This document shows, piece by piece, positions 6,916-62,301 of a stretch of DNA of 64,000 nucleotides (positions within the stretch are counted from its first letter, which is position 1; the number at the start of each line of letters is the position of its first letter). This DNA comes from Octopus sinensis (taxonomy: Eukaryota), in the NCBI RefSeq assembly GCF_006345805.1, contig NC_043014.1, positions 54,622,001 through 54,686,000 on the forward strand, read 5' to 3'. The position numbers and the translations under genes are program-made. The notes beneath the pieces are model-generated. The model did not search any database. It saw nothing but the letters and a program-made list of their open reading frames with translations, and was not told where the DNA came from.

Positions 6916-6983
6916 TGGTGGTGATGATGAAGGCAGTGTGTTTCATTAGAATGTAAGAATTACTGGATCTCTTGTCCACTTAC

Positions 6984-7034
6984 CTGTGAATATCCCAGAT
7001 GTTTGGTCAGCGGTGTTGTGTTTATTATTAATAA
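6984..7034 (-). other. Candidate 51-nt exon (unassigned)
   Basis: CTTCTGCCAG| acceptor and CACAG|GTAAGT consensus donor; open in two frames; no protein recognised. Confidence 0.25.
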
Positions 7035-7067
7035 CTGGCAGAAGTTTTTATTCATAATAAAAGAAAC

Positions 7068-7130
7068 TATATATATATATGTGTGTATGTGATATATATA
7101 TATATTATATATATTATATATATATGTATG

Positions 7131-7181
<51 letters not shown>

Positions 7182-7219
7182 GATATATATATAATATATA
7201 TATATATATATTGTATGTG

Positions 7220-7250
<31 letters not shown>

Positions 7251-7304
7251 GTATGTGATATATATATGTATGTGATATATATGTATGTGATATATATATA
7301 TTAT

Positions 7305-7347
<43 letters not shown>

Positions 7348-7373
7348 GATATATATATATATATATATATGTT

Positions 7374-7424
<51 letters not shown>

Positions 7425-7447
7425 ATGTGATATATATATATATATAT
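7068..7447. repeat. Compound (TA)n/(TG) microsatellite
   Basis: Direct inspection. Confidence 0.95.
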
Positions 7448-7656
7448 CAGTATGTGACGTCGTGAGTACCACCGGCGATTTTTTTCCTCTGTCTTCCCTT
7501 CTCTGGATCTTTCCTTCTCCTTTGTTTCCGACGAAGAGCTCCGCTCGAAACGTTAAACCCTCCTTCTTCCCTTCTTTCCTGAGCGTCCAATAATACTTTA
7601 TTTGTTCCACGTCCTCGCATTGTTGTGTTTTTTTGTTTTCTTGTTTGGATTAACTT
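7448..7656 (+). mobile_element. (TA)n-embedded short element carrying a hammerhead motif (Penelope-like/retrozyme-like)
   Basis: Bounded by TA tracts on both sides; contains fold at 7524; distantly homologous to 8259-8452 (shared TTCCTGAGCG..TAATAC). Confidence 0.6.
7524..7558 (+). ncRNA. Minimal type-I hammerhead-like motif, variant core CCGACGA
   Basis: GTTT|CCGACGA|A|GAGC-TCC-GCTC|GAAA|CG|TT|AAAC: stem I GTTT/AAAC, stem II 4 bp, palindromic ACGT stem III, putative GUU site. Confidence 0.6.
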
Positions 7657-12335: not shown

Positions 12336-12890
12336 ATAGGTGTGTATAAATATGTATATAGGTGTGTGTATATATGTATACATGTGTGTGTGTGTGTATT
12401 GGTTAGGGATGGTCTCTGATGATTGCCATATTTAGTCACTAAGTCCCTCGATGTCAAAATGAACTTAGCCAATCACTAAATAAAGATCGATAAAATAGCA
12501 CCAGACACAAAATTCTGGGCCACAGTCCAAAAAGAAACCAGAGCCTTGAAGTGAGTTAAAGAGTGCTTCTTTCATCTTTTGATATCTTTCCATAAATTAG
12601 ATGCCTCCTAATTCCTTGAACCATTATTCAAGTCCATAAATCTTCAGAAGAAGAACATCTCTTGCAGAAGAGAGTTCTGCTAATATATTCCGTCTCTTAT
12701 TCCGGAATCCTTTCTTTGCCATTGAAATACATTCTTCTGCAGTTCTGCTGCCTCCTCTTCAGTATTACCATGATCTCCACCTCATCCTGCAATAATTAGG
12801 TTACCAAACGTCTGTGATGCCTTATTCCAGAGTGAATTTCTTGAATTACTTATCATATTCCTTGGCACTGAACCTAAACTCAGAAAACTC

Positions 12891-13322
12891 TTGTTGGATG
12901 GCTGGATGGTTGGTTGGTTGGATGGATGGATGGCTGGCTGGTTGGTTGGTTGGTTGGCTGGTTGGTTGGTTGGATGGCTGGCTGGCTGGCTGACTGGCTG
13001 GTTGGATGGTTGTCTGGTTGGTTGGATGGCTGGCTGGTTGGTTGGTTGGATGGCTGGCTGGTTGGTTGGATGGTTGGCTGGCTGGCTGGCTGGTTGGTTG
13101 GTTGGTTGGATGGTTGGCTGGCTGGCTGGCTGGCTGGTTGGATGGTTGGTTGGTGGGTTGGTTTGTTGGTTGGATGGTTGGCTGGCTGGTTGGTTGGTGG
13201 GTTGGTTTGTTGGTTGGATGGTTGGCTGGCTGGCTGGCTGGTTGGTTGGTGGGTTGGTTTGTTGGTTGGATGGCTGGCTGGCTGGCTGGCTAAATGGTTG
13301 GATGGCTGGTTGGATGGTTGGT
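12891..13322. repeat. Compound tetranucleotide array (GGTT/GGAT/GGCT)n
   Basis: Direct inspection; source of the spurious WLVG ORFs. Confidence 0.95.
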
Positions 13323-13889
13323 TAGTCCATTGGCACCTCTCACTTGCAACAATGTCTTTCTTATTTATTCTCTCAGTAAAACAATTAATTCAAGTAAAAA
13401 CAACCACTTCTCATTTATTTACATGCTGATAACTATTTTTCTTTCTTTCTTTTTTTTTTTTTTTTTTGATTTGTTTGTTTCCCCCCCCCTCTCTTTATCT
13501 ATGCATAAGAAATATGGAAATATCGCCAAATAAAGGAAGTCTTGGGAGGAAATTAACAGACATTAATGCCAGCACAGTGTCTGGAGATCTTTGCTGAATT
13601 CAAAGACCTGGTTTATGGCCACTTGGACATGCAAATAACAACAACAACAACAACAATAATAATAATAATAATAATAATCATCCTTTTATTGTGTCCCCTG
13701 GCCTCTCTTTTGAATGCAGCAGAAGGCATGTGCACACACGCAGTCATATGAAAGCGCAGGATGTGCATTCATTGCCCTATAAAAAGGAAGGCCAGGAGAA
13801 GGATTGTCAAACAATAAGTTTTTATCATTTTACTTGTTTCAGTCATTGGGCTGTGGCCATACTGGGGCACCACCTTCTAGAGTTTAGTT

Positions 13890-21450: not shown

Positions 21451-21687
21451 ATTAGAAGAAATGAGGTACTCAGAAATCTGGATGGTTTTATATTTACTGA
21501 TATTTATTAGTAAGTTATGTGTTTTTATAAATCATATATTAGCACTTGCGTTCACTCTAGTAGATTTGACAAATCTGCTAGAGTGGATGCAAGCGCTAAT
21601 ATATGATTTATAAAAACATATAACTTACTAATAAATATCTGTAAATATAAAACCATCCAGATTTCTGAGTACCTCATTTCTTCGAAT
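21451..21687. repeat. 237-bp fold-back palindrome (118-bp arms, 1-nt spacer)
   Basis: Arms 21451-21568 and 21570-21687; 7 mismatches by manual alignment (~94%); TA tracts nearby on both sides. Confidence 0.95.
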
Positions 21688-21705
21688 ACATATGTATATA
21701 TATGT

Positions 21706-21961
21706 CAGTGGCACGTAAAAAGCACCAACCGATTCTGGCCGTTTGCCAGTCTCCTCTGGCCCCTGTGCCGGTGATATGTAAAAAGCACCCACTACACTCA
21801 CGGAGTGGTTGGCATTAGGAAGGGCATCCAGCTGTAGAAACACTGCCAGATCAGACTGGATCCTGGTGCAGCCTCCTGGTTTCCCAGACCCTGGTCGAAC
21901 CGTCCAACCAGTGCTAGCATGGAAAACGGACGTTAAACGATGGTGATGATGATGATGATGA
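21706..21961 (+). mobile_element. RTE LINE 3' tail with one array unit
   Basis: Two GGCACGTAAAAAGCACC-type boundaries, then the standard tail and (TGA)n. Confidence 0.9.
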
Positions 21962-22268
21962 TATATGGAAGAAAGAAAGTAGCACACAACACAATTCATA
22001 GGAGTTCCATACATGTTTTGATAACAGTTTGAATCAGTTGCACATCACATAAAGTTTTGTAAGTGCACAGGACGTGCCCATCTCATCAGATGCTAGAAGC
22101 GGACTGGATGTATCTTACATGCCCCGTGCTGCTTTGAGTCTTGTGGAACTGAGTCCCAAGTGTTATTCAACAACATGAAATATTGGAGTATCTCGATGGG
22201 TGTGTCGATCGGTGGTGGTCGTCACCTTCCAAGTGTAACTCTCCTGCCATTGTCTCAATACCTTTTAA

Positions 22269-22473: not shown

Positions 22474-23458
22474 TTAATATTGCCTCCACTGTCAGCCCTC
22501 TCCACCATTCTCCCATCCTACAAGCATCATTTGATGTTTTGTTTAATAAGTTGACATCGGATGTTACTTTGGGGTTCAAAAGTTTAGCCCCCATACCCTT
22601 CCACTACACAGCATCTTGGGCAAGCACCTCCTACCACAGCTTGATCAGGACCGTAAGAAGGGGATTTAGTTGACAGAGACTGTATAGAAGCCTACCATGC
22701 ATGCGTGTGTGTGTGGTTGTCACTGCTTGGATATCAACAGAAGATTAAACCATTTCTGTATTATGTCTCTTTTTTTTTTCTTCTTCTTCTTTCTGTCATT
22801 TCCACTGATGCCATTGTAAATATCAAAGACCAACGCTTGGCCATTTGCAAAGCTGCAACCAGCCTTGCCATCATTCACAAACTATGATTATACAAAAGAA
22901 AGTGAAATAGTTTTCACATCAAAGCTGTTGATAATAAATAGAGAATTGATCATCTGGAGATGTTGTTTGTGATGAGAGAGACTGGTAACCAGCATCCAGG
23001 ACGATGATATTTAGATTCAGATTTTCATGGGACAAATGGAATTATTTATTAATTCCACCATTTGGTGTTAAGGGATTAATTCTTGTTCAATAGTAAAATC
23101 TGTTTCCTATTGTATTTGTTATTAAATCAGAAAATAATTGTGTTTTAAATACTGGAATTAAATAATTTTATTTAATTATTACATTGTTTACGATACTAAT
23201 TATTATGTTAGTTTATTGAATGCATTTCATAATTTAAATTTTTATGTATTTATTTATTTTATTTTATTTTTTTGCTTTCAGATGCTGCTTTGGTGAAAGA
23301 ATCTTCTCGAAAAAGCATCGTTTCTCTGGCCAAAGTTGTCTGCAGCATCCAGGACAGAAGCGAATTTCTATTTTAAACTGTTACAAGTCGTTGATTGTGG
23401 TTTTATTCTTTGGCGCTGCAGATCCACTGAAAGAACTAGTGTATCTCTCACAGAATCA

Positions 23459-26400
23459 ATGACTTTAGACAATCTAATGGTCGTTGAATCTGAAGCAAAG
23501 AATCAAACTGGAACAGATAGCTCCAGGAATGTCACATTTGAATCCAGTAACTCGGCAAGTGACGCGTGTCTACAGGACAACACCTCCAAGAGCTCGTGTG
23601 AAAACAATGCTTCTATATGCAAGTTGGAAGCTTCTGGTTCTGAAAGTCTTTCCCCTATAGAATTAGGTGAAGGCCATTCTTTAGCTGCCGATTCTCTTTC
23701 GGAGAACTTCAAACATGACGTCAGAATCTACGAAACTGCTCAAAATGCCATCATTGAATTGTTACAGAAGACCAAGAAAGCCGACGAAGAAGACGGCACT
23801 TTTGAGAATGTGACAAACGAAACGAGAGTTGCCACTGATAGCATTCAGGGGTTGAGTGATTTTGATGAAATTGAGGACGAAGACGAAGAGGATGGTGCAA
23901 GCAGCGAATTAGAGACGACACAGAGAACTCTTGCTGGACTTGTGGAATTGTCGGGCAACCTTTATGAAATTTCAAACTTTCCTCAAAATCCTTCGAAAGA
24001 AGATTTCAACGAAACCAACTGTATTGAAAATAATGTTTCAGGAGAACTCGGTACAGTTGAAGGAGGCCACGCCTATATAACAACAGACTCCGTAGGAAAT
24101 TTGGAGATTTATGGGGGGAAATCTACTGTCGATGCAGAGATTCTAACAAACAGTATTGTTGATTGTGAAAGTTCTACCAATGATAGAAGTCAGGGAGAGG
24201 AGAATTATGTGGATTCGATGAGTGAAAATGATGCCACTGTAAATATAATTGCAACATTAGATACTGAGGAGTCCAATGAAATCCACACTCGTATGAAGCA
24301 GATATTGGATGGTTCCGGAACGAGTGAGCCCACAAATATAGACAACTGTGAGAAAGGACTCTGTGATTCTACTGCTGCAGCTGCTGCTGGTTTTGAGAAC
24401 AAAATTTGTGATTCTGGAGGCTTGGAGAATTCTTCCGGTGGAGAAAGCCTGTCGGAAAGTGTTGGCATCGGTGCGAGAGAAAGCAACCCACCGCGTGGAG
24501 AACAACACAACGACATTTGCAGTCGAGTAAATTCAAAAGGCAATATTTGTGAAAGTGTCCTTCCAATGGACAATATTTGCGGCGCTGATGTTGCTATGAA
24601 CGATTTGTGTGAGGCAGACCTTCCTATGTCAGATATGTGTGAACCAGAAATCCCTATCAGTGACGTGTGTGCTGCAGAGATACCAATGGCTGATGTGTCT
24701 GATATTGCAATGCAAGACATCTGCGAATCTGATATTCAGATGAATGCCATATGTGATAGCGATATCTCTATGAATAACATTTGCGCCTCTGATATCCAGA
24801 TTGGCACAGTGTGTGGGCCAGAAATTACCATGAGCAATATCTGTGGCACCGATATTGGGATGAATAATGTATGTGTGGCTGATATTTCAATGAGCAATAT
24901 CTGTGTAGCCAACAGTCCTGGCAATAATATCTGTGTATCGGATAGTCCTGGGACCCATATCAACTTCGCTGGAACCAGTATTTGTACATCGGACAGTCCC
25001 GGTAATATATGTGTCACCGATAGTTTAACCAATAATATCTGCACCCAGGAAGTTCTTGCTAATAACATCTGCGCCACGGATGCTTTGGGAAATACAATTT
25101 GCACAGCAATTACACTTGAGAACAACATCTGTGCCACCGACATATCAAACCTCTGTGTAGCGAGTGTGGCAAAGAACGTCAACCAAGAAGCATTAACCAA
25201 CTCCGATGGCAGTGTGGCCAGCATTTGCCAGACTGATACCCAGGGTGGTTTGGTTGATGTAAGCATGATCAAAACGGAACCAGCCAGCAGCAATACGTAC
25301 GGGGTTTGTCTGACTCAGAACCAAACAAACGACCAGGTTGCCGAGACAACGGCACCGGATGCTACTAAGAAGAAAAGACCAAGTCGACCAAAGTCATCGG
25401 TACCCGAGACTTGTACTGTTTGTAACCGAGTGTTTACAAATTCAACCAGTTTGAAGAAACACATGAAAACCCATTCGGGTGAGAAACCGTTTGAATGTGA
25501 TGTTTGTAAAAAATGTTTCCAGGAACCAAGCAACTTGAAGCGACACAAGATCATCCACTCAGGTGAGAGGCCGTTTAAATGTAAAGTTTGTGAGAAAGCA
25601 TTTTCACAGTCGTATACGCTGACCAGACACATGCGCACTCACAAACCCAAAACAGAATCTGTTGAGACGGTCAACGCTACAAGCGGAGCAGTTGTCACGA
25701 CCACCGACAGCACCGTTGCGATCAGTGAAAATGGATCTGAAGACCTGAAACCATTGGCTACCAGCAGTTGTGTTTCTGCTCTGCCAGCTATTAGTTCGTG
25801 TGTTACTGCTTTACCTGCGATCAGTACCTGTATGACGGCCCTGCCATCAATTAGTACATGTATTACAGCTCTGCCAACTATTAGTACATGCATGACTGCT
25901 CTACCGACTATAGGTACTGTACTACCAACTATCGGCACCTGCGCCACGGTGCTGCCGACCATCAGCACCTCAGGCACCACTGTCTTACCTATGAACAACA
26001 ACACCATACTCCAGGGCAACAACGCTTGCCTGGCAGTTATTACAAACAACGGAGAGACTGTGTCTTCAGTTGGCAACATTTGCACAGCTGGACTTGTTAA
26101 CACCATATTGGCTGCTGCAAGCTCATCTGACAACCTCGGCAATGGTTTGTGCGCTGCCGAGGGCCCCACAGTTGAAATAGAGAGCAGTATGTGCTCTCCT
26201 ACTGAACTTGCAGTTGCCGTGTGTGGCACCGACGTCTCCAAGAACAGTGGAGGCGAATCAACCGTATCTTCCAAGGAATCGGAAACTTTTGATTTGGATA
26301 CTCTCAGGGAAAATGTTGAATCTGCTTCGGTGGAAGCTGTTGTTGATGGGAACCAGGTGTCTGAGGAGGGGCTGTTGGAGGAGAACAAGATGGTGGTGTG

Positions 26401-27004
26401 TAAAGTGGAACCAATAGATATTCAGAACGAAATATTTGAGACGGCAGAAACGATCAAAACTGAAGGTGGCGTGAACAGTAACAGCAATGGTAGCAGTGCC
26501 AACGGACAGAAGAAGAAGAAGAAAGCGAATCGCTCCAAGTCAGTGGTTTCAGAAGCTTGCGCTATTTGTAGCCGGGTGTTTACGAATCTGACAACTCTAA
26601 AGAAACACCTGAAAACTCACACAGGGGAGAGGCCATTCGAGTGTGAAGTGTGTCACAAATGTTTCCAGGAGCCGAGTCATTTGACCAGGCACAAAAGAAT
26701 TCATTCTGGAGAGAAACCATTTAAGTGCAAAGTCTGTGAGAAGGCCTTCTCCCAGTCGTACACGCTGACCCGGCACATGCGAACACATTCCGGCGAACGC
26801 CCGTTCAAGTGTGATGTCTGCAGCAAGGCCTTCTCCCAGTCCTACACACTTACTGTACACAGGCGGACACACTCCACCGACCGACCTTATGAGTGTGAGA
26901 TATGTCACTCCAAGTTCTTTGAGGCGTCCCATCTCACTCGCCATTTCCGGACACACATAGGAGAACAGCACTTCACCTGTGAACTTTGTCATAAACACTT
27001 CTAA
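23459..27004 (+). CDS. C2H2 zinc-finger protein (~1181 aa): acidic low-complexity N-terminus, Cys-periodic repeats, 3-finger cluster, second repeat tract, 5 fingers plus truncated 6th
   Basis: Single open frame; canonical CX2C-X12-HX3H fingers with TGERPF/SGEKPF linkers at 25412-25642 and 26558-27001. First in-frame ATG is 23459; the track's 23336 start is TTG, with an in-frame stop at 23294 after the acceptor at 23281. Confidence 0.93.
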   Translation: MTLDNLMVVESEAKNQTGTDSSRNVTFESSNSASDACLQDNTSKSSCENNASICKLEASGSESLSPIELGEGHSLAADSLSENFKHDVRIYETAQNAIIELLQKTKKADEEDGTFENVTNETRVATDSIQGLSDFDEIEDEDEEDGASSELETTQRTLAGLVELSGNLYEISNFPQNPSKEDFNETNCIENNVSGELGTVEGGHAYITTDSVGNLEIYGGKSTVDAEILTNSIVDCESSTNDRSQGEENYVDSMSENDATVNIIATLDTEESNEIHTRMKQILDGSGTSEPTNIDNCEKGLCDSTAAAAAGFENKICDSGGLENSSGGESLSESVGIGARESNPPRGEQHNDICSRVNSKGNICESVLPMDNICGADVAMNDLCEADLPMSDMCEPEIPISDVCAAEIPMADVSDIAMQDICESDIQMNAICDSDISMNNICASDIQIGTVCGPEITMSNICGTDIGMNNVCVADISMSNICVANSPGNNICVSDSPGTHINFAGTSICTSDSPGNICVTDSLTNNICTQEVLANNICATDALGNTICTAITLENNICATDISNLCVASVAKNVNQEALTNSDGSVASICQTDTQGGLVDVSMIKTEPASSNTYGVCLTQNQTNDQVAETTAPDATKKKRPSRPKSSVPETCTVCNRVFTNSTSLKKHMKTHSGEKPFECDVCKKCFQEPSNLKRHKIIHSGERPFKCKVCEKAFSQSYTLTRHMRTHKPKTESVETVNATSGAVVTTTDSTVAISENGSEDLKPLATSSCVSALPAISSCVTALPAISTCMTALPSISTCITALPTISTCMTALPTIGTVLPTIGTCATVLPTISTSGTTVLPMNNNTILQGNNACLAVITNNGETVSSVGNICTAGLVNTILAAASSSDNLGNGLCAAEGPTVEIESSMCSPTELAVAVCGTDVSKNSGGESTVSSKESETFDLDTLRENVESASVEAVVDGNQVSEEGLLEENKMVVCKVEPIDIQNEIFETAETIKTEGGVNSNSNGSSANGQKKKKKANRSKSVVSEACAICSRVFTNLTTLKKHLKTHTGERPFECEVCHKCFQEPSHLTRHKRIHSGEKPFKCKVCEKAFSQSYTLTRHMRTHSGERPFKCDVCSKAFSQSYTLTVHRRTHSTDRPYECEICHSKFFEASHLTRHFRTHIGEQHFTCELCHKHF

Positions 27005-31347: not shown

Positions 31348-32995
31348 ATGTATGTGTGTATATATATATATATCTGAGAGCGTGAATACATATATAAAGT
31401 GAGTGATATATATTCCAACTTTCAACTGGTCAGCAGAATCGCTCTGGTATTTATAAGGTTTGTTGTTTGTTTGTTGTTTTGTTTTGTTTGTTTGTTAGGT
31501 TTTTTTTTTTTGCTACAAACTGAAAGAAAAATATTGCTATAAAAGAAAAAGAAGTCAAAAAAAAAACATGGAATTAAACTTATTCACAGAAAAATGACAC
31601 AAAAAAAAAAAAACGGTTCTGAAAAATGGTAAATCGGTCTTGTTTGTTTGTGACCCGGTCTTGTTTGCGTGTGTGTGTGTGTGAGTGCATGTGCGTGCGT
31701 GTATGTGTGTGAGTATGTTCTATTTATTTTTTTAAGACTTTTTCTTTTTGACCGATGGTTTTGGTGGAGCGGGGCGTTATTTTCAGTGGAGTTTTGTGTC
31801 ATGCCCTTCTCACCGTTATCTCCTTCGTTAATTAATCATCAGTTTTTCATCAGTGTTTTTAATCAGTATATCTAAAAAGGAAACAAACAAAAAAAAAGTT
31901 GAAAAAAAAAAAAAATGGAATAAGCATATTTGTACCTCTTTTACTTTTTCTTCTTCATTGTGTGCAAGAGTAAAGGTAACGCCAAAAAAAAAAGGGGAAA
32001 AAAAGGAGAAAACTGAAGAAAAAAGAAAAAAAGAAAAATTTGGTCGGGGGGGGGGGATAAAAGTGGGATCGGGGGGGAAAGCTTAAAAAGAACAGATCTA
32101 AAATGGGGGAGGGGTGATTTTTTCCTATTTTTTTTTTGTTTTTTTTTTCCCCCCTGAAATCAGAAAAAGCAATGCAACAACAAAAACAGGAATAACTCTC
32201 TTCAAGAACGTGTACAAACAAATAAATAAAATAAATATATTGAAGAATAAAAACAAAAGAAAAACAAAAAAACTACTTTCAACCGAATAATTTCCAAATT
32301 TCTCAGTTGAAACGTTCTCATGAAAGGACACACGGACACAGTCTTGGTGTTACTAGTATTACTGGTATGAATTTGTTATATTAAAAAAAAAAAAATAGAG
32401 AGTTTAAGCCAACAACAACAGTAACAAAAAATCTCTCCTGTTGGTGAGCAATATATACTTTGTGTGTGTGTGTTTTATTAATGTCTGTGTCTGTAATTAT
32501 CTTCAAGTTTTTTTTTTTGTTTTTTTTGTGCCATTTTGTGATCTTAGCTAGAAACATTCATTACACACGCACACACACACACACATTGACACACACACTG
32601 ACACACACAGAGCAACCCCTGAACCCTTTCGTCTCTCTCTCATCTCATCTCATCTCATCTTTCCATCCTCTCTCCCTTTCCGCTCATCACCATCTCTTTT
32701 TGGAGACGGAGAAAAAAACATGAAAAATATACAAACATGAAAGAAAGAAAAAAGAAAAAAATGATGAAATGAAATAATAAACACAACTGCAGTAAAAAAA
32801 AAAAGAAAATGCACCCCACCCCCCTCCAGTCATCCCTTCTCCTCTTCCAAAAACAAACAGACATTTCTTTGTAAATATCACATACTTCATACAGTTGCTC
32901 AGGTAGCAGCAAATACACACACACACTCGTATATATATATATATATATACACATATATACACATATACATGTGTATATGTATGTGTGTGTGTGTG

Positions 32996-33042
<47 letters not shown>

Positions 33043-36000
33043 CATATACATATGTGTATATGCATGTGTGTGTATAGATATATGTATATACATATATATA
33101 TATATATATATATACATATATACACACATATATACACATATATACACATATATACACATACATTTTACAAAAAGGAAAAAAGACTTACATTGCTGATTAA
33201 CCCCCACCCCCCTCATTTTTTTTTTATTAAAGGACAAATATATGTATGTATATATATATATGTGTATATATATATATGTAGATATATATATATATAAATA
33301 AATATTGATGGTTTTAATTTCTAGAAACTGCAAATGGAATTTAGATGGTGCTCAGATAGAAGTTTCATGTTCTTGTCTTTGAGTTTTGTGGCTTTTTTTA
33401 CAAAAAATAATAAAACAAACTTTTATTTATTTTTTTTTCTCTCCCTAACGAGGAAAAAAAAAATCAACGTGACATGGAATTTTCTGGTTGAAGTACAAAA
33501 AAAAAATGAATTTATTTATTATATATATATATATTTTTTTTTTTTAGGTGGCTTTATTTCTGGAAATTTCTTCATCTCAATGTTGAATTCAAAGACAATT
33601 TGCAACATTTCCATCTCCAGTCACACTTTTTTTGTTTTGTCAAAAACCATTTCTGAAATTCTTTTTTTTTTTTTTTTTTTTTTCCGGTGGTCAAAAATTC
33701 TTACATTGTTTGTAAAAAGTGGTAAGACTTGGCCCTTTTTCTACTTCCTGTCTGTTTTTTTTTTTATTTATTTATTTCATTACAACATTTTCTTCAGCTC
33801 CATTTTTTCTTTTCTTGTTTGTTTTTACAAGACTTTTTTTTTTCCTTTTCTCTTCATATTCTTTGTAAAAAAGAAAAAAGACAAAAACAACAAAACAGTC
33901 CAGTCTAAAAGTTTGTGTCAGTTCTTTGTGTTTTGGGAATCTCTTGGTGGCTCACTGCTCACAGACTGCCCTGCTTTTAACTTCCCAATGTTTCTCCTTC
34001 ACATACATACAGACCGTATACACTCACCTATGTATGTTGAACATCTCTCTTAAGATAGAAACCTTAAGTTATTCACTGACAACGAGATGGCTGATGGTCA
34101 ATTTTCTGTTCTATGTCCATACTTTTAATAATCCGTTAAATGTTAACGATATTTTACTTCTTCGATTATAATTTAGACAAATTCTTTTTTTTTTTTCTTC
34201 TTTCTTTCTGTCTTTCTTTTTCTTCTTAAAAAAACATCTGCAATGAAAAGGAATCGTGTCCGTTTTGTGAAAAAAGTTCAAATTTTCAAATTTTAAATCA
34301 TTTAAAATGCAAAACAGTAAAACTATGAAAATTAAAAAAAAAAAAAATTAATTAATTAATTAATGCTGATTATTTAATGGAAAGGAAGAAGAAAGGAATG
34401 GTTGGTTGAATGAGTGAAAGAGAGAAAGAAACCGAATGAAAGCAGTGTTGCATGTGAAGAAGAATTATATTTGGATTTGTCAAGTTGCTCCTTATGTCTA
34501 ATTTCCTCAAAGACATAACAACAGTGCTTCTGGGTTGCCGCTAGGTGGGGGTGGGCATGGTTGGGTGTTGTTACTTGTCCCTTGCTGCTGGGTGGGGGGG
34601 TCTTAGCAATGAGTTGTTGTTGTCCATCTTATTGCATGTCTTGGACGTAGATATCAAGCGTTGACCGGTCAAAGACGGTGGAGTTTTAGTGCTAGTCCTA
34701 TTTGTGCAGTTGGTTAAATTCTCTTATCCATTTTGGTCTTTGCTCTCCTCACCACGACCACCACCACCAAATTCTCTGTTGAGGGTGTCAGTGTGGACGG
34801 GAGGGGGCATGGGAGTAAAACTTGTTCTTTTTCCCCCCTCTTTCTATTTTTATTATTTTTAATTTTATATAAATATATATATATATATAAAAAATATCTT
34901 TTTTAGAATTGTTTTATATTTTTATCGTCAGTTTTATATTTTATCGTCGGCTTTTTTTTTTCTAAACTTTAAAAAAAAAATCAATGAATATATATAAAAG
35001 AGGGGTTATGAGGGAGAGAAATTCCATCGATTTCTTGGCTCAGATTATACAAGAACAAATGAAAATAAGAAAAAAGATAACGTAGGAAGTGTAAAAGCTA
35101 TGATTAATGGGAATCCATTGGCGCTTCGAGTAGGGGGTTTTTGGTCAAGGCAATTAGCTCAGCTGTTGATTTATCTCCCTTTGGTTTTCTAGCTCTTTAC
35201 ATTTCCTCAAAGACACAGATGATCATCATCATCATCGTCATCATAATCATCTCCATCATCTTCATCCTCGTCATCTGCTGTCCATTCACCACACCTCTCC
35301 TCTAGGTTTCAGTCATGGAATGTTCTGCTACATTCCAACGATGGCTTTAATGTATTTGGCTAATAAATAAGACAAATTTGTTTCTCTTTTGTGATTGGAA
35401 TTTAATCAATAGTAAAAAAAAAAAAAAATCATTGAACAGTCAAAAATGTGTTTGTCTTTGAAATGCTTCTCTGAAAACGTCTTTTCTATTTATTTACTTT
35501 TTCTTTGTCGACTTATTTTTGTTTCTGCCCCCCCCCCCCCCCTCCTCCCGCAAGTGATGAATTTTTGGCAAACTCACTTTATTTCTCTTTCTTTGTTATC
35601 TCCCCACCCACACTCTCTTGTATTATTTCTATTACTTGTACACACACGTGTGTGTGTGTATGATATATGCATACATATACATTACATAACTATATATATA
35701 TATGTATATAACTATATACATATATATATATACATGTCTCTATGTATGTGTATTATTTTTAGACAAGAATGTTATCGACTGTAACTTCGCAGTTTCAAGC
35801 CCTTGCCCTGCAATGGCTTAACTGGCTAAAACTTCAATGTCACTATCAATAATATTCTTGTCTAAAAACAATAAATCTGTACTCTACAAAAGTGTAGAGT
35901 AACCTTTCAGATTAATGTAGAATTGTTTTTATTAAATCTAAACATAAAATCAAACATTGTGTGTATATCTACACACACACACATATAAAATCACTGGAAT

Positions 36001-50539: not shown

Positions 50540-51160
50540 CAAACCATTATATATATATATGTATGTATATGTATATATGTATATATATATGTGTATATAT
50601 ATATATGTATATATAGTATGTATGTATATCTGTACTTTGTTTGAAACAAATGTGGTGTTAATTAGATATCTGCTTAGTATTGTTGCTGTTTAGTAAGTTT
50701 TGTTATTAATCTTAACTGATGGAATTAAATTGAAAGAAGAAAAAAAACTGCAAATGTAATTTCAGGTGCAAAGATGGACATTGTTTCACCTGTGTGTGTG
50801 TGTGTATGTATATATATATATATACATATATACATATATATATATATATGCATATATGTATGTATATATATATATATATATATACACACACATATTTATA
50901 TATGTATATATATATATGTGTGTGTGTGTGTGTCTACAAATATATATATATATATATATGTATATATCTATGTGTACATATATATATATGTATACATGTG
51001 TATATATATTATATATATATATATCTGTATATATATATGTATATATATATATATGTGTGTTTATGTAAATGTATATATATGTATGTATATATATATATAT
51101 GTATGTATGTATGTATATATATATATATATATATGTCTGTGTGTGTGTGTACATATACAT
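50540..51160. repeat. Long degenerate (TA)/(TG) microsatellite
   Basis: Direct inspection. Confidence 0.95.
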
Positions 51161-51424
51161 ATGTGGCATTTACTTCCCAAGTGGAGGTAACTCCTCAGCA
51201 ATGGCCATAACTCCATAAAGTCTCAACCTTTTTGGTTCTGTTGAGGATCTCCAAATACAAAGATTGATGTCATTGTAGCCCTTGCTCCGGTATGGCCGCA
51301 GTCCCATAACTGCTACCCATAAGAGTATATACCTACACACACATTAATATATATACACACATTAATATATATATCTATATATATAGCTGTAATTAAATGA
51401 AACAATGAAATTTTTTGAAAACTT

Positions 51425-57912: not shown

Positions 57913-59185
57913 AGTGTGACACTTTTTCAAGCATCTCAACAATCTCACCAGACCTGTCTTTCAGTGTGCCAACCCTGAGGGTGTGGGAGGTGTGGGCCCA
58001 TGAGACCCTGGGATGGGGAACAGCAGTGTCATGTACCTAAAAAGAAAGCTTGCATTTAGTAGCTACCGTGGCACAATTTACCTTCAAATGTAAGTGAATC
58101 CCTGCTTCATTACGGAACACTGTTCTCTGTGAAGTATACTCTCTTAACATTCTTGCTCAATCTGTTAGAAATAGCAGCCAAATCACTGTTAAATCACACA
58201 CTGTTCTAACTTAAGAATGGACTAACACATTGGATAATATAGTCATGGGTGAACTCTGTTATAAAAAGAAATATACGAGATGGTCATGACTGGAACACCT
58301 TTTGTCATAGGTTTGCTTCCTAAAAGTTTATCTGGAACCGACAACTTGGCATGATAGTTTTGTGTTTAAGAAGTTCGCTTGGCAGTCTTGTTGTTTCCAG
58401 TTCGATACCAACAGACAGCATTTTGAATAAGTGTCTTCTACCATAAGATCAGGTTGTTTAAGATAGTGTGGGTAGAATTTAGCTGAAGGAAACTGTACAG
58501 AAGCCTATCACCTACAAACATGAGAGAGAAAGAGAGAGAGAGAGGGAAAGAGAGAACGTGTGCTTGCTTCTCAGTGAGGCCTTGATATGTGTGTATGTTT
58601 CTTCTTTGAGTTTTATTTCAGTTCTTCTCGAGAGATTCCAAGCCAGTTGCTAACAAAGTGACAAGATTTTCCGAGAGTTCCTGGTGTTTGTAAATATGTG
58701 GTTGAATTGGTGTGTTCGTTCAACTGTCAATGCTTTTGCCCAAATGTGTGCATCTATTCACCTGAGAATCTCAGATGGAGAATTTTTGTAATGTCTTACA
58801 GATCTTCACTGTGCCACTTATCGACTGGATTTGAAGAATCCACGGCAGTTTCTTTTGCCCTTTCTCTGTGAAGCCAAGTATTTCTAGGTTATTGTGCAAA
58901 TTTGTTAGTGCATTACCTAATGCATCTCTGACGATAGGGACAGACAAGAATTTGTGTGTGTGTGTTTTGGTGAAAGTTATAAGCACTGATAGGAAAATTG
59001 ATAACGTAGTACTTTTTAAGTGAAGTCCATTGAAATAGTTGTTCTGAAGCACTTAACAGACACTCCTATATCAGTGTCATCAACAGAACAGCAGGGAACT
59101 TGTGAGATTGGCCTGTTAGAAAATATAACGAACAAGACTGTAGTTTTTTTATCGTGACATGAGATAAAGAAAATATTGATAAATA

Positions 59186-59613
59186 ATCTGAACATGGCTG
59201 ATGCCAGCGCTGCCTTGACTGGCTTCCATGCTGGTGGCACGTAAAAAGCACCAATCCAATCGTGGCCGTTGCCAGCCTCGCCTGGCACCTGTGCCGGTGG
59301 CACGTAAAAAGCACCATCCGAACGTGGCCGATGCCAGAGCCGCCTTGACTGGCTTCCATGCCAGTGGCACGTAAAATGCACCAATCCGACCGTGGCCGTT
59401 GCCAGCCTCCCCTGGCACCTGTGCCAGTGGCACGTAAAAAGCACCCACTACACTCACGGAGTGGTTGGTGTTAGGAAGGGCATCCAGCTGTAGAAACACT
59501 GCCAGATCAGACTGGGGCCTAGTGCAGCCTCCTGGCTTCCCAGACCCCGGTCGAACCGTCCAACCCATGCTAGCATGGAGAACGGACGCTGAACGAAGAT
59601 GATGGTGATGATG
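59186..59613 (+). mobile_element. RTE LINE 3' UTR with A-B-A-B array
   Basis: Boundaries at 59236, 59299, 59366, 59429 (63/67/63 spacing), then standard tail. Confidence 0.9.
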
Positions 59614-60075
59614 AACGACGAAATAAACAAACAACATTGGAGAAAATATAAGCAATAAATAGCGATACTACAACCACAATCATCACTACCATCATCATTG
59701 TCATCATCATCATCTTCACCACCACTACTGACACCACCACCACCACTACCACCACCACCAATGCCACTGTCGTCATCATCATCATCATCACAACCACTGA
59801 TAAAACTACTGCTGTGGCCACCCCTCCTCCATCATCATCATCATCATCATACTAGACACAAATATGTTCTCTTTAATGGGCCATAACATCCTTCCCCCTC
59901 CCCTCTATAACATTGCTGTCTCCCCCCTCTATACTGATACTATGTGCCTCTCCACCCCTACCCCCCCCCAGCACTATTATCTATTAATGTCTGTCCTGTG
60001 GAACCAAATGTCAGGAGGACAGAATCAATAATGCTTCCATGAGTCACACTTGACAACACAAACTGGTCTCTAATA

Positions 60076-60333
60076 AGGTGTGTGTTTGTGTGTGTGTGTG
60101 TATGCATCTGTGTGTGTGAGAGTGTGAGTGTATATGTGTGTGTGTGTGTGTGTGTGTTTGTGTGTGTGTATACGCGCGTGTGTGTGCATGTGTTTGTGTG
60201 TGTGAGTGAGTGTGTATGCATGTGTGTGTGTGTGTTTGTGTATGTGTGTGTGTGTGTGTGTTGGTGTGTGTGTGTGTGTGTTTTGTGTGGTGTGTGTTTG
60301 TGTGTGTGTGTGTTGTTGTGTGTGTTGTGTGGT

Positions 60334-60365
<32 letters not shown>

Positions 60366-60380
60366 TTGTGTGTGTGTGGT

Positions 60381-60413
<33 letters not shown>

Positions 60414-60425
60414 GTTTGTGGTGTG

Positions 60426-60466
<41 letters not shown>

Positions 60467-60479
60467 TTGTGTGTGTGTG

Positions 60480-60512
<33 letters not shown>

Positions 60513-60523
60513 TGTGTGGTGTG

Positions 60524-60582
<59 letters not shown>
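60076..60582. repeat. ~500-bp interrupted (GT)n microsatellite
   Basis: Direct inspection. Confidence 0.95.
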
Positions 60583-60584
<2 letters not shown>

Positions 60585-60977
60585 TAAAGCCACACACTTC
60601 CAATAAGGGTGACATATCTTTACCTCACAGATCCATCGGAACTTGTGTCGTTCCATGCACCTATGACATTTACGGGTCTAATCAAGCAGAGAATGTGGTC
60701 AGAACATAAGCTGTGGCTCACCTGAAACACCTGTCAAGACGAGCTAATTACATGATCCCTTTCGTTTGTTTTGTATTCTTTATTTTCGTATTTTTGTATT
60801 CCATGTGAATATACTCGTCAGGTCTTCCTCCTGTTCATCTGCCCTTCTGCTTCCATACCCACTCAATGGGGGTCGTTCTTGGGACCCCGCAGTCTGCTGC
60901 CCTGGATGAAAAACTTGGAATTTAGGATCGCTTACATCTGAGCAATACTCTTTCAATATTAACACAATACATATAAA

Positions 60978-61128
60978 TACCAGCATAGCTGATCGGGTGG
61001 CAGGGGCAGTCCACCCCGGGTAGCTTATATAAAGGGTCTGCTGCAGGCATTATGTGTTTTTTGTGGCGTCTGGGGAGCAGCAAATGGAAGGGCCGCCCTG
61101 GGTCACACACACTCTAGCTACGCTAGTA
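60978..61128. mobile_element. GC-rich MITE with short TIRs
   Basis: TACCAGCATAGCT ... AGCTACGCTAGTA (13 bp, 2 mismatches); subterminal CCACCCCGGG / GCCGCCCTGGG. Confidence 0.55.
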
Positions 61129-61939
61129 CACACATACATACATACATATATACATACATGCACACATACATACATACTTATATACATGCATACATACATA
61201 CATACATAATACATACACACATGCACACATACATACATACATATATACATGCATACATATATATATGGAGGGGTGTATACACATATGTCATCTTCATCAT
61301 CCTTTAAAGTCCTTCTTCTGTGTGGGCATGGGTGGAGAGTTTGATGACAGCAGCCAGCAAGTGAGAGAGATGCACCAGACTCCGATCGTCTGTTCTGGCC
61401 TGGCTTCTATGACAGCTGGGTGCCCTTTCTAACACCAATCCCTTTACAGGGTGTACTGGGTGCTTTTTGGGTGGCGCCAGCAGCAGTGGGGGTCACTGAG
61501 TAAACAGGTAATGTTGAGGGAGTGGGGGAGGGGTTGTGCCAGGAAAGGAGAGGAGTCTGAATAAAGGGACAGAAATAGGTGTCTTGCAGTGGAGGAGATA
61601 CAGGGTTACCTCAGTTGGAAAGAGTTGGGGGAGAGATGAAGATGTGGCAGGGCCCTAACACCCAAGTATTGGGGAGGTGTATACTGGAGCAGGGATTGGG
61701 TAGGGTGAGTGGGTGGGTAAGTTTGTGATAGTGCAAAAGGAGAGTGGGAGATGGAGGGGAGAGGAATGTAGTGGTGAGCAGAGGTAGAGGGAGAGGGGGG
61801 TCTTTGGAGGTTATGTTGTGCTGAAGAGATTCAATAAGGTAGGTTTGTGGAGAAAAGTGGGAGATAGGCATGGGGGGAGGGGAAAACAGTAAGTGGTGAC
61901 CATGGGTGGAAAGAGACATACACATACACACGTGTGTGT

Positions 61940-62301
61940 GGCACATAAAAAGCACCATCCGAACGTGGCTGATGCCAGCGCCACCTCGACTGGCTTCTGT
62001 GCCGGTGGCACATAAAAAGCACCATCCGAACATGGCAGATGCCAGCACGTCCTTGGCTGGCTCCCGTGCCGGTGGCACATTAAAAACACCAACCAATCGT
62101 GGCCGATGCCAGACTCCCCTGGCACGTAAAAAGCACCCACTACGTTTGCGGAGTGGTTGGCGTTAGGAAGGGCATCCAGCTGTAGAAACACTGCCAGATC
62201 AGACTGGAGCCCGGTGCAGCCTCCAGGCTTCGCAGACCCTGGTCAAACCGTCCAACCCATGCTAGCGCGGAAAACGGACGTTAAACGATGATGATGATGA
62301 T
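61940..62301 (+). mobile_element. RTE LINE 3' UTR with A-A-truncated B array
   Basis: Boundaries at 61940, 62007, 62074, 62121, then standard tail and (TGA)n. Confidence 0.9.

What the first reader, a model, noticed from the sequence alone, without database searches (positions are those of the whole stretch)
24509..25165. About 23 Cys-centred 10-residue repeats (NIC-x-x-D-I-x-M/G-N) in the ZNF protein
Seen: 23 units, 21 with Cys at a near-constant 10-aa period, and DNA too diverged to be a recent minisatellite. I do not recognise a named domain. Inference: alternating polar/hydrophobic pattern with Asn/Cys ladders suggests a beta-solenoid, a metal-binding (metallothionein-like) or redox-sensing array fused to a transcription factor.
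Basis: partly seen in the sequence, partly recalled or inferred. Interest (0 to 1): 0.7.

Follow-up and report, generated by a model that had tools for sequence, protein, structure and literature searches.

The report
Conserved Cys-laddered decapeptide array, octopus zinc-finger protein
An octopus zinc-finger gene carries 21 ancient ten-residue repeats, each with one cysteine; selection holds them as tightly as the zinc fingers, and their sequence resembles bacterial pentapeptide-repeat beta-helices, but structure prediction does not confirm that fold.

Summary
Window 24512-25177 (+) encodes 21 Cys-anchored units with consensus N-I-C-x-[AST]-D-I-x-M-N. Sixteen of 20 Cys spacings are exactly 10 residues; 0 of 100,000 shuffles reach that. 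The array lies in a single-exon, 1181-aa C2H2 zinc-finger gene annotated "ZNF236-like" in octopods.

It is not a recent minisatellite. Units share about 50% of nucleotides and 35% of third codon positions.

It is under very strong purifying selection. Octopus versus Argonauta gives dN/dS 0.019 at dS about 1.1, the same as the zinc fingers. Flanking segments give 0.11-0.15. All 21 Cys are kept in five orthologues.

No Pfam domain matches. Each unit does read as two pentapeptide repeats. A search of 1.84 billion proteins returned, apart from orthologues and translated satellites, almost only pentapeptide-repeat proteins. The best PDB sequence hits are also pentapeptide-repeat proteins.

My best reading is an acidic (net charge -28) pentapeptide-type beta-solenoid with an Ile/Val core and outward Cys ladders. 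It most likely arose by convergence from a 30-bp tandem amplification.

Two AlphaFold2 runs stayed at low confidence (pLDDT 41-44), so the fold is inferred, not shown. Function is untested. No homologue was found outside octopods.

The parts
23459..27004 (+). Single-exon coding sequence of the zinc-finger protein: 1181 aa, ATG at 23459, TAA stop at 27002-27004. The same gene is annotated in other octopods as 'zinc finger protein 236(-like)'.
   Evidence: The frame is open. The orthologues P0002 and P0003 start at the same Met. Nucleotide similarity to Argonauta is confined to 23419-27000. Cluster members are named from O. bimaculoides and O. vulgaris.
24512..25177 (+). Repeat A: 21 Cys-anchored decapeptide units, consensus N-I-C-x-[AST]-D-I-x-M-N, with 30 D/E against 2 K/R.
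   Evidence: periodicity and composition; dN/dS 0.019; 21/21 Cys kept in five orthologues.
24512..24691 (+). Run 1 of repeat A: units 1-6, equal to 12 contiguous pentads.
24692..24715 (+). Cys-less 8-residue remnant unit DVSDIAMQ. It breaks the register and could be a loop.
24716..24955 (+). Run 2 of repeat A: units 7-14, equal to 16 contiguous pentads. This is the most regular part and the only part with AlphaFold2 pLDDT of about 55-62.
24956..25003 (+). Irregular stretch: a 7-residue insert HINFAGT followed by a 9-residue unit SICTSDSPG.
25004..25177 (+). Run 3 of repeat A: units 16-21 (10 contiguous pentads, then a final shifted unit NLCVASVAKN).
25367..25393 (+). Basic patch KKKRPSRPK that looks like a nuclear localisation signal, directly upstream of zinc fingers 1-3.
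   Evidence: The role as a localisation signal is inferred from the motif only.
25412..25642 (+). C2H2 zinc fingers 1-3.
25760..25993 (+). Repeat B: a second decapeptide array, S-T-C-[M/I/V]-T-A-L-P-x-I, with 30-bp period. It does not look like a pentapeptide repeat.
   Evidence: Tandem Repeats Finder, period 30, 25769-25902; dN/dS 0.09.
25994..26233 (+). Region of irregularly spaced Cys with N-x-C-x-A motifs (NNACLAV, GNICTAG, NGLCAAE, VAVCGTD). It is as constrained as repeat A.
   Evidence: (dN/dS 0.018).
26558..26956 (+). C2H2 zinc fingers 4-8. Fingers 4-6 are a duplicate of fingers 1-3.
   Evidence: (72% nucleotide identity of 25367-25641 to 26513-26787).
26972..27001 (+). C-terminal half finger FTCELCHKHF, cut off by the stop codon. 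It is conserved in Argonauta.

Best explanation
Repeat A is a protein-level, strongly constrained domain. It was built by an old tandem amplification of a 30-bp unit.

Each 10-residue unit is two pentapeptide repeats: [N/S/G]-[N/D]-[I/V/L]-C-x and [A/S/T]-[D/E]-[I/V/L]-x-[M/G]. I therefore think the array most likely folds into a beta-solenoid of the pentapeptide-repeat type. In that fold, four pentads (two units) make one coil. The array would give about 10 coils in three runs (12, 16 and 10 pentads) separated by short loops.

In that register the Ile/Val residues fill the core. Asn/Asp and all acidic residues face outward. The Cys residues sit at the outward i+1 position, forming two ladders on opposite faces.

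The product would be a rigid, strongly anionic rod (net charge -28, roughly 50 A long). It sits about 80 residues upstream of a basic patch and three zinc fingers in a presumably nuclear protein.

Its most plausible job is a docking or regulatory surface. One possibility is DNA-like competition for the neighbouring fingers or for another DNA-binding partner. The thiol ladders would be available for redox or soft-metal modulation.

Shown here: periodicity, age, selective constraint, sequence resemblance to pentapeptide-repeat proteins. Inferred: the fold and its geometry. Speculative: the function.
For: Periodicity is far beyond chance.

Octopus versus Argonauta dN/dS is 0.019 at dS 1.10. The zinc fingers give 0-0.019 and the segments flanking the array give 0.11-0.15; other linkers reach 0.23. 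The array is 100% identical in four Octopus-lineage proteins whose overall identity is 96-99.7%.

The 7 Argonauta substitutions inside units fall only at unit positions 4, 8, 9 and 10. None falls at N-I-C or [AST]-D-I.

Composition is order-like. I, V, L, M, F, W, Y and C together make 38%. Mean hydropathy is 0.529 against a boundary of 0.459.

phmmer of residues 55-700 against 1.84 billion representatives gave 103 non-orthologue hits, all on repeat A. Of 75 scanned, 57 are Pfam Pentapeptide proteins.

BLASTP against a bacterial pentapeptide-repeat protein gives E=2e-15, with NICGADVAMN aligned to SLCGADLRYA.

The best PDB sequence hits are the Np275/276-derived 'beta1' solenoids (E=1.2e-3) and 2j8k. 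NCBIfam shows sub-threshold Alr5209 and HetL pentapeptide hits.

Permuting the order of unit columns, which keeps composition and period, destroys the similarity. Native best score is 87.6 bits. The permutation mean is 17.4. Only 4 of 400 permutations reach the native score.

Pentad audit: i-1 is D/N/E-type in 88% of pentads and i is hydrophobic in 83%. There are runs of 12, 16 and 10 contiguous pentads, against the >=8 named in the review PMC8145042.

Both AlphaFold2 models are beta-rich at period 10, and their weak Foldseek lists consist of beta-solenoids.
Against: No Pfam pentapeptide model (PF00805, PF13599, PF13576, PF25296) hits the segment even at E<=10.

The centre residue is Ile/Val. 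Only 10% of pentads have the canonical Leu/Phe. Asn occupies the normally small, inward i-2 position in the 'a' pentads.

AlphaFold2 confidence is low both with a 3-sequence alignment (mean pLDDT 40.6) and with 26 bacterial pentapeptide-repeat proteins added (44.1). DSSP shows 8-residue strands with 2-residue turns rather than an obvious four-faced coil.

Foldseek finds nothing significant: best E is 0.35 and 0.59, and TM is at most 0.32.

E-values between periodic sequences are inflated. Twenty-four of the 103 library hits are translated satellites. About 1% of random column orders look equally pentapeptide-like, and I noticed the resemblance post hoc.

The register breaks (8, 7+9 and 8 residues) are not multiples of five.

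The pentapeptide proteins used in the permutation control were themselves selected as hits to the native sequence.
Confidence: 0.4

Rival explanations
1. The array is an ordered beta-rich domain of a different architecture. Examples are a two-faced solenoid or beta-meander with one 8-residue strand per decapeptide, or a cross-beta self-assembling module. In this reading the resemblance to pentapeptide repeats is a by-product of the alternating polar/Ile pattern.
For: Both AlphaFold2 models place 7-8-residue strands separated by 2-3 residues at period 10 (E76-82, 85-92, 96-102; E66-73, 76-83, 86-93, 96-103). The strong constraint and order-like composition fit any folded beta domain. About 1% of column permutations mimic pentapeptide-repeat proteins equally well.
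Against: Those models have low confidence. DSSP ladders in solenoids can also read as long strands. The N/D-then-hydrophobic pattern at strict period 5 is specifically the pentapeptide signature.
Confidence: 0.22
2. The array is an intrinsically disordered, acidic and hydrophobic low-complexity region. It would act as a transcriptional activation or condensate-forming domain, conserved because of short linear motifs.
For: AlphaFold2 pLDDT is below 50 for most residues. There is no Pfam domain. Net charge is -28 with interspersed I, M and L, as in acidic activation domains. The N-terminal 350 residues of the protein are acidic and lie on the disordered side of the boundary.
Against: A dN/dS of 0.019 across 219 residues, equal to the zinc fingers and 5-12 times lower than the other linkers, is atypical for disordered regions. 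Order-promoting residues make 38%, only 26% are P, E, K, Q, S, R or G, and the segment lies on the folded side of the charge-hydropathy boundary. Unit number and length are invariant across five orthologues.
Confidence: 0.2
3. The array is a metal-thiolate (metallothionein-like or Cu(I)/Zn cluster) sensor. Metal binding to Cys, together with Met, would organise the array and couple metal status to transcription, by analogy with the Cys cluster of MTF-1.
For: Twenty-one invariant Cys and 11 Met lie in 219 residues, next to zinc fingers. This reading is compatible with a solenoid that displays Cys and Met outward.
Against: Cys is only 10% of residues. There are no CC, CxC or CxxC motifs and only one His. 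The non-Cys core positions are just as invariant as Cys, so constraint is not centred on the thiols. No similarity to any metal-binding family was found.
Confidence: 0.12
4. The array is not a protein feature. It would be a minisatellite or another DNA- or RNA-level element that happens to be open in this frame.
For: This genome does contain 30-bp satellites that give Cys-every-10 translations. G000:C30 at 9.09 and 9.43 Mb is open in all six frames.
Against: Synonymous divergence is about 1.1 with almost no amino-acid change. Third codon positions are randomised among units. The other five frames are not comparably open across the array. The array lies inside a conserved coding sequence with zinc fingers.
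Confidence: 0.02

Closest known systems
Pentapeptide-repeat proteins (Pfam PF00805 clan; MfpA, Qnr, AlbG, HetL, Np275/276, Rfr32; right-handed quadrilateral beta-helix)
   Same: Strict 5-residue periodicity of a hydrophobic centre, preceded by D/N and by a small residue at i-2 in the 'b' pentads. Runs of 12, 16 and 10 contiguous pentads. Short non-repeat insertions, like the Qnr loops. Strongly acidic exterior, as in the DNA-mimicking MfpA and Qnr. These proteins dominate the library, PDB and NCBIfam sequence hits. Some bacterial members carry Cys at the same i+1 position (SLCGADL).
   Different: The centre is Ile/Val rather than Leu/Phe. Asn sits at i-2 of every second pentad. Cys is invariant at i+1 and Met is frequent at i+2. 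The true repeat unit is 10 residues (30 bp). Pfam models do not reach even E=10. The fold is not confirmed by AlphaFold2. The context, a metazoan nuclear C2H2 protein, has not, to my knowledge, been described for this family. The origin is most probably convergent, by local tandem amplification, rather than common descent.
ZNF236 (conserved metazoan protein of about 1850 aa with many C2H2 zinc fingers)
   Same: It is the best-scoring named relative of the zinc fingers (44-52% identity over the fingers), and public annotation gives this name to the octopod gene.
   Different: The octopod protein has 1181 aa, 8 fingers plus a half finger, and a single coding exon. ZNF236 of gastropods, bivalves, Lingula, Owenia, a brittle star and a primate shows no Cys run at period 10. 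Only the fingers align, covering 19-30% of the query.
Cys-containing insect antifreeze beta-helices (Tenebrio molitor type, 12-residue TCTxSxxCxxAx repeats)
   Same: A short tandem repeat with regularly spaced Cys and Thr/Ser/Asn-rich faces, folding as a beta-solenoid. This comparison rests on established knowledge only and was not tested here.
   Different: Those proteins have a 12-residue period, two Cys per unit forming internal disulfides, and are secreted. Here there is one Cys per 10 residues in a presumably nuclear, reducing environment. No sequence hit was found.
Metallothioneins and the MTF-1 Cys cluster
   Same: A Cys-rich segment associated with a zinc-finger transcription factor.
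   Different: Cys density is about three times lower, with no CC or CxC motifs, and the period is regular at 10 residues. No sequence similarity was found.

Membership tests
Pentapeptide-repeat protein family (PF00805 clan) | At least eight contiguous pentapeptides matching the consensus (A/C/S/V/T/L/I)(D/N/S/K/E/I/R)(L/F)(S/T/R/E/Q/K/V/D)(G/D/E/N/R/Q/K), as given in PMC8145042 | tested here: inconclusive
   Contiguous runs of 12, 16 and 10 pentads are in register. Position i-1 matches in 88% and i-2 in 55% (81% in the 'b' pentads). The centre is L/F in only 10%, although it is hydrophobic in 83%. Position i+1 matches in 17% and i+2 in 38%.
Pentapeptide-repeat protein family (PF00805 clan) | Score above the gathering threshold of a Pfam pentapeptide model (PF00805, PF13599, PF13576, PF25296) | tested here: not met
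   hmmscan of the segment at E<=10 returns only a spurious NHL hit. The whole protein returns only zinc-finger families.
Pentapeptide-repeat protein family (PF00805 clan) | Detectable sequence similarity to bona fide members, in a consistent register | tested here: met
   Of 75 library hits scanned, 57 are PF00805 proteins. BLASTP gives E=2e-15 against P0028. PDB hits are 4yfo at 1.2e-3 and 2j8k at 0.05. In the permutation control 4 of 400 permutations reach the native score. Caveat: statistics between repeats are inflated.
Pentapeptide-repeat protein family (PF00805 clan) | Right-handed quadrilateral beta-helix fold with 20 residues per coil | tested here: inconclusive
   AlphaFold2 mean pLDDT is 40.6 and 44.1 and pTM is 0.39 and 0.38. 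Foldseek best E is 0.35 and 0.59 and TM is at most 0.32; only beta-solenoids appear in the weak lists.
C2H2 zinc-finger proteins (whole gene product) | Tandem C-x2-C-x12-H-x3-H fingers matching PF00096 or PF13465 | tested here: met
   PF13465 scores E=1.3e-46 and PF00096 E=3.7e-38. A regular expression finds eight complete fingers.
ZNF236 orthologue group | About 1800-1900 aa with finger clusters along the whole length, and colinear similarity outside the fingers | tested here: not met
   The protein has 1181 aa and 8 fingers. Similarity to ZNF236 proteins covers only 19-30% of the query, namely the fingers. phmmer found no match to the N-terminal region outside octopods.
Metallothionein-like Cys-cluster domains | About 25-33% Cys arranged as CC, CxC or CxxC motifs | tested here: not met
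   There are 21 Cys in 219 residues (9.6%), with a minimum spacing of 8.
Recent minisatellite or non-coding tandem repeat | High nucleotide identity between units, no codon-position asymmetry, and copy-number variation between species | tested here: not met
   Unit identity is 50%. Third codon positions are 35% identical against 58% at positions 1 and 2. Unit number is identical in five orthologues. dN/dS is 0.019.

The most novel reading that the evidence does not exclude
An octopod-specific transcription factor has evolved, from a 30-bp tandem repeat, its own pentapeptide-type beta-helix. The helix would act as a built-in DNA mimic: an anionic rod of roughly DNA dimensions that occupies the adjacent zinc fingers, or a partner's DNA-binding surface. 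Oxidation or soft-metal (for example Cu or Zn) binding at two surface Cys/Met ladders would release or lock it. That would be a redox- or metal-gated auto-inhibitory DNA mimic inside a eukaryotic transcription factor, arising by convergence with bacterial MfpA and Qnr.
Probability: 0.07. Interest if true: 0.85.

Novelty: new variant of a known kind. Interest (0 to 1): 0.55.

Why it matters
If the fold inference is right, this would be, to my knowledge, the first pentapeptide-type beta-helix found in a metazoan zinc-finger transcription factor. It would also be a clear case of a solenoid domain arising de novo from a short tandem DNA repeat and then being frozen by selection.

It also gives a concrete, testable hypothesis: an acidic rod next to DNA-binding fingers, with regularly spaced thiols. 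That bears on how transcription factors might be auto-regulated or made sensitive to redox state or metals.

Even if the fold is different, a 219-residue repeat array with dN/dS equal to that of zinc fingers and no recognisable domain is an uncharacterised, lineage-restricted functional module. It sits in a clade known for its expansion of zinc-finger genes.

Tried and rejected
1. Paralogues in the same genome. The six-frame search gave 157 matches, but apart from the locus itself they are satellites or weak periodic noise. The arrays on G000:C30 at 9.09 and 9.43 Mb are a 30-bp satellite (TTICSSHLQG) open in all six frames. I rejected them as homologues.

2. Orthologues outside octopods. Three word-based searches and one exhaustive phmmer search found only the Octopus cluster and Argonauta. 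ZNF236 proteins of other molluscs and metazoans lack any Cys run at period 10. Squid, cuttlefish, Vampyroteuthis and Nautilus genomes could not be searched as DNA with these tools, so absence there is not shown.

3. Evidence of transcription. The Logan contig L010 is colinear with the genome, with no splice, so it does not prove expression.

4. Pfam and NCBIfam on the segment. Nothing reaches threshold. The sub-threshold hits are a 'Cys-every-fifth RiPP' model (E=0.003) and the Alr5209 and HetL pentapeptide models.

5. AlphaFold2, run twice: once with orthologues only, and once with 26 bacterial pentapeptide-repeat proteins added. Both gave low confidence. Foldseek on both models found nothing significant.

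6. Internal duplication of the whole [Cys array + basic patch + 3 fingers] module. Only the basic patch and fingers are demonstrably duplicated (72% nucleotide identity). The upstream halves are not significantly similar (E=0.22).

7. Literature. I found no paper linking pentapeptide repeats to octopus, or ZNF236 to Cys repeats.
Full report
**The locus.** The window is G000:C18:54622001-54686000 of a 2.72-Gb genome. Positions 23297-27004 (+) form one 1235-codon open frame.

Orthologous proteins start at the Met at 23459. Nucleotide similarity to Argonauta hians starts 40 nt upstream of that ATG and ends at the stop. The gene therefore has a single coding exon of 1181 aa.

The exact protein is in public collections. 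It clusters at >=90% identity with 'zinc finger protein 236 [Octopus bimaculoides]' (XP_014781964.1) and 'zinc finger 236-like [Octopus vulgaris]' (CAI9738010.1). 'Zinc finger 236-like [Argonauta hians]' is 86% identical.

Pfam recognises only C2H2 finger families. The architecture, in order, is:
- an acidic N-terminal region;
- repeat A, which is the finding;
- a KKKRPSRPK basic patch and fingers 1-3;
- a second decapeptide array (repeat B), then a region of irregularly spaced Cys;
- a KKKKK patch and fingers 4-8;
- a half finger cut by the stop codon.

**The observation.** It is correct. There are 21 Cys, and 16 of the 20 successive spacings are exactly 10 residues. In 100,000 shuffles of the same 219 residues none reached 16; the maximum was 7.

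The unit consensus is N-I-C-x-[A/S/T]-D-I-[P/S/L]-M-N. The array holds 30 acidic residues, 2 basic residues and 1 aromatic residue.

The regular register is broken three times:
- an 8-residue Cys-less remnant, DVSDIAMQ;
- HINFAGT followed by a 9-residue unit;
- an 8-residue unit near the end.

At the DNA level the units are old. Mean pairwise identity is 50%. Third codon positions are 35% identical, against 58% at positions 1 and 2. Tandem Repeats Finder sees only fragments.

**Selection.** This is the strongest result. I computed Nei-Gojobori estimates on codon alignments of the window against Argonauta.

| Region | dN | dS | dN/dS |
|---|---|---|---|
| Repeat A | 0.021 | 1.10 | 0.019 |
| Zinc-finger clusters | - | - | 0 and 0.019 |
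| N-terminal region and the four linkers | - | - | 0.11-0.23 |

Against a second octopus (Logan contig, dS 0.18) repeat A has 21 synonymous differences and no non-synonymous ones.

Across five orthologues the array is 100% identical in the four Octopus-lineage proteins and 95.9% identical in Argonauta. All 21 Cys are retained and the unit number does not change.

The seven Argonauta substitutions that lie inside units all fall at unit positions 4, 8, 9 or 10. If the ten positions were equally mutable, that would have probability 0.4^7, about 0.002.

The constraint is therefore on the whole N-I-C / [AST]-D-I framework, not on Cys alone. This excludes a non-coding or minisatellite explanation. 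It also makes a generic disordered linker unlikely. Composition agrees: 38% of residues are I, V, L, M, F, W, Y or C, and mean hydropathy is 0.529 against a charge-hydropathy boundary of 0.459.

**What it resembles.** The segment matches no Pfam model at E<=10.

I ran an exhaustive phmmer search of residues 55-700 against 1.84 billion representative proteins. It found the orthologue cluster and 103 weaker hits (E from 1e-13 to 1e-3). Every one of those 103 aligned to repeat A.
- Twenty-four of them are near-perfect tandem repeats, that is, translated satellites such as DITMS or DVCTS.
- Of 75 scanned with Pfam, 57 are Pentapeptide (PF00805/PF13599) proteins and 41 also match PF25296 'Decapeptide repeat region'.

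BLASTP against one bacterial pentapeptide-repeat protein gives E=2e-15, with NICGADVAMN aligned to SLCGADLRYA. The best sequence hits in the PDB are the Np275/276-derived synthetic 'beta1' solenoids (4yfo, E=1.2e-3) and Np275/276 itself (2j8k, E=0.05). NCBIfam gives sub-threshold Alr5209 and HetL pentapeptide hits.

In this register each decapeptide is two pentads. The 'a' pentad is [N/S/G]-[N/D]-[I/V/L]-C-x. The 'b' pentad is [A/S/T]-[D/E]-[I/V/L]-x-[M/G].

As a control, I permuted the order of the ten unit columns identically in all units. This keeps both composition and period. Similarity to the pentapeptide proteins fell from 87.6 bits to a mean of 17.4 (sd 15.4). Only 4 of 400 permutations reached the native best score. 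One of 400 reached the native summed score; that one re-creates the D-I ... N-I spacing. Global shuffles peaked at 11.7 bits.

The resemblance therefore depends on residue order, with an empirical p of about 0.01. It is still a post-hoc observation, and the pentapeptide set was selected by similarity to the query.

**How far it departs from the family.** I compared it with the definition in the 2021 review PMC8145042 (>=8 contiguous repeats, five-position consensus). The array has runs of 12, 16 and 10 contiguous pentads.

| Pentad position | Match to consensus |
|---|---|
| i-1 | 88% |
| i-2 | 81% in 'b' pentads, 29% in 'a' pentads (mostly Asn) |
| centre (i) | hydrophobic in 83%, but L/F in only 10% (Ile/Val instead) |
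| i+1 of every 'a' pentad | Cys, outside the consensus |

From established knowledge of the right-handed quadrilateral beta-helix, i and i-2 point inward and i-1, i+1 and i+2 point outward. This is my own knowledge and the review passage read here did not cover it. On that basis the model puts Ile/Val in the core. Asp, Asn and all other acidic residues face outward. Cys falls in two ladders on opposite faces. Pro at i+1 followed by Gly at i+2 (the SPG units) sits at turn positions where those residues are favourable.

**Structure prediction.** It did not settle the matter.
- With the three-orthologue alignment, AlphaFold2 gave mean pLDDT 40.6 and pTM 0.39. Only the most regular run (units 7-13) reached about 60.
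- With 26 bacterial pentapeptide-repeat proteins added to the alignment, which biases toward that fold, it still gave 44.1 and 0.38.

Both models are beta-rich, with 7-8-residue strands at period 10.

Foldseek against the PDB found nothing significant: best E was 0.35 and 0.59, and TM was at most 0.32. The weak lists consist almost entirely of beta-solenoids. These include left-handed acyltransferase helices, MfpA, QnrB1, the beta1 designs, pectate lyases, CAP-CARP, the SV2 luminal domain and bactofilin.

I treat this as 'beta-rich and compatible with a solenoid, fold not determined'.

**Origin and distribution.** The true repeat unit is 30 bp, and adjacent units are up to 77% identical. The array occurs only in the octopod gene among everything searched.

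The simplest history is a local tandem amplification in the octopod lineage, followed by divergence and fixation. Any pentapeptide-type fold would then be convergent with the bacterial family rather than inherited from it. That is why I file it as 'works like' and not as 'member of'.

Decapodiform and nautiloid genomes could not be searched, so the age beyond the Octopus-Argonauta split is unknown.

**Mechanism.** I think the array most likely forms a rigid, strongly anionic beta-solenoid rod of about 10 coils, with outward thiol ladders, tethered about 80 residues upstream of a basic patch and three zinc fingers (confidence about 0.4). It would serve as a docking or regulatory surface.

The most interesting version is an intramolecular DNA mimic gated by redox state or metal, by analogy with MfpA and Qnr. 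That is speculation; I give it about 0.07.

The rivals are:
- another beta-rich architecture (0.22);
- a conserved acidic disordered activation domain (0.20);
- a metal-thiolate sensor (0.12), which partly overlaps with the solenoid reading;
- a non-protein artefact (0.02).

**Verdict.** The metallothionein idea is not supported. The domain is uncharacterised, restricted to octopods as far as the data go, and under zinc-finger-grade constraint. The fold and the function both need experiment.

Noticed in passing
window 25760-25993 (+): The same protein carries a second decapeptide array (repeat B), S-T-C-[M/I/V]-T-A-L-P-x-I, about 7 units long. Tandem Repeats Finder reports period 30 at 25769-25902. 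It is rich in Ser, Thr and Pro, does not look like a pentapeptide repeat, and has dN/dS 0.09 against Argonauta.
   Followed up: partly
window 25994-26233 (+): This region has irregularly spaced Cys in N-x-C-x-A motifs (NNACLAV, GNICTAG, NGLCAAE, VAVCGTD). Its dN/dS of 0.018 matches repeat A. It may be a degenerate second copy of the A-type array, but BLASTP between the two halves is not significant (E=0.22).
   Followed up: partly
window 25367-25641 versus 26513-26787 (+): There is an internal duplication. The basic patch plus fingers 1-3 is 72% identical in nucleotides to the basic patch plus fingers 4-6. Each copy has a SUMO-consensus-like psi-K-x-E motif upstream (MIKTEP at P0001 residue 658, VCKVEP at residue 1035).
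   Followed up: partly
window 26972-27004 (+): The coding sequence ends in a half zinc finger (FTCELCHKHF, then TAA). The same ending occurs in Argonauta and the other octopus proteins. No further finger-coding exon lies in the 37 kb downstream.
   Followed up: yes
G000:C30:9088000-9105000 and 9426000-9438000 (loci L002-L008): These are very large arrays of a 30-bp satellite that stays open for up to about 2900 codons and in all six frames (TTICSSHLQG, NNDLLLSLAG, RFAPLTCREQ). They mimic a Cys-every-10 protein in six-frame searches.
   Followed up: partly
window 12774-13429 (both strands): A 12-bp-period minisatellite is open on both strands ([11 protein letters not shown] on one, [11 protein letters not shown] on the other).
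   Followed up: no
window 21628-22044, 59149-59667, 61611-62162 (-): An interspersed repeat occurs in several copies sharing the translated motif GWTVRPGSGKPGGCTR...DLAVFLQLDALPN. Pieces of it also match the flanks of the Argonauta locus L009, so the element family is shared across octopods.
   Followed up: no
window 59958-60709: A long (TG/CA)n-type microsatellite accounts for the GC-skew spike of 0.36 in the 60001-62000 bin. Similar (TA/CA)n tracts lie at 6960-7649, 32655-33351 and 50729-51210.
   Followed up: no
protein P0028 and other bacterial hits: Several bacterial pentapeptide-repeat proteins have a 10-residue super-period with Cys at the same i+1 position (SLCGADLRYA, ADLCGADLCG). A Cys ladder on a pentapeptide helix is therefore not unique to the octopus protein.
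   Followed up: no
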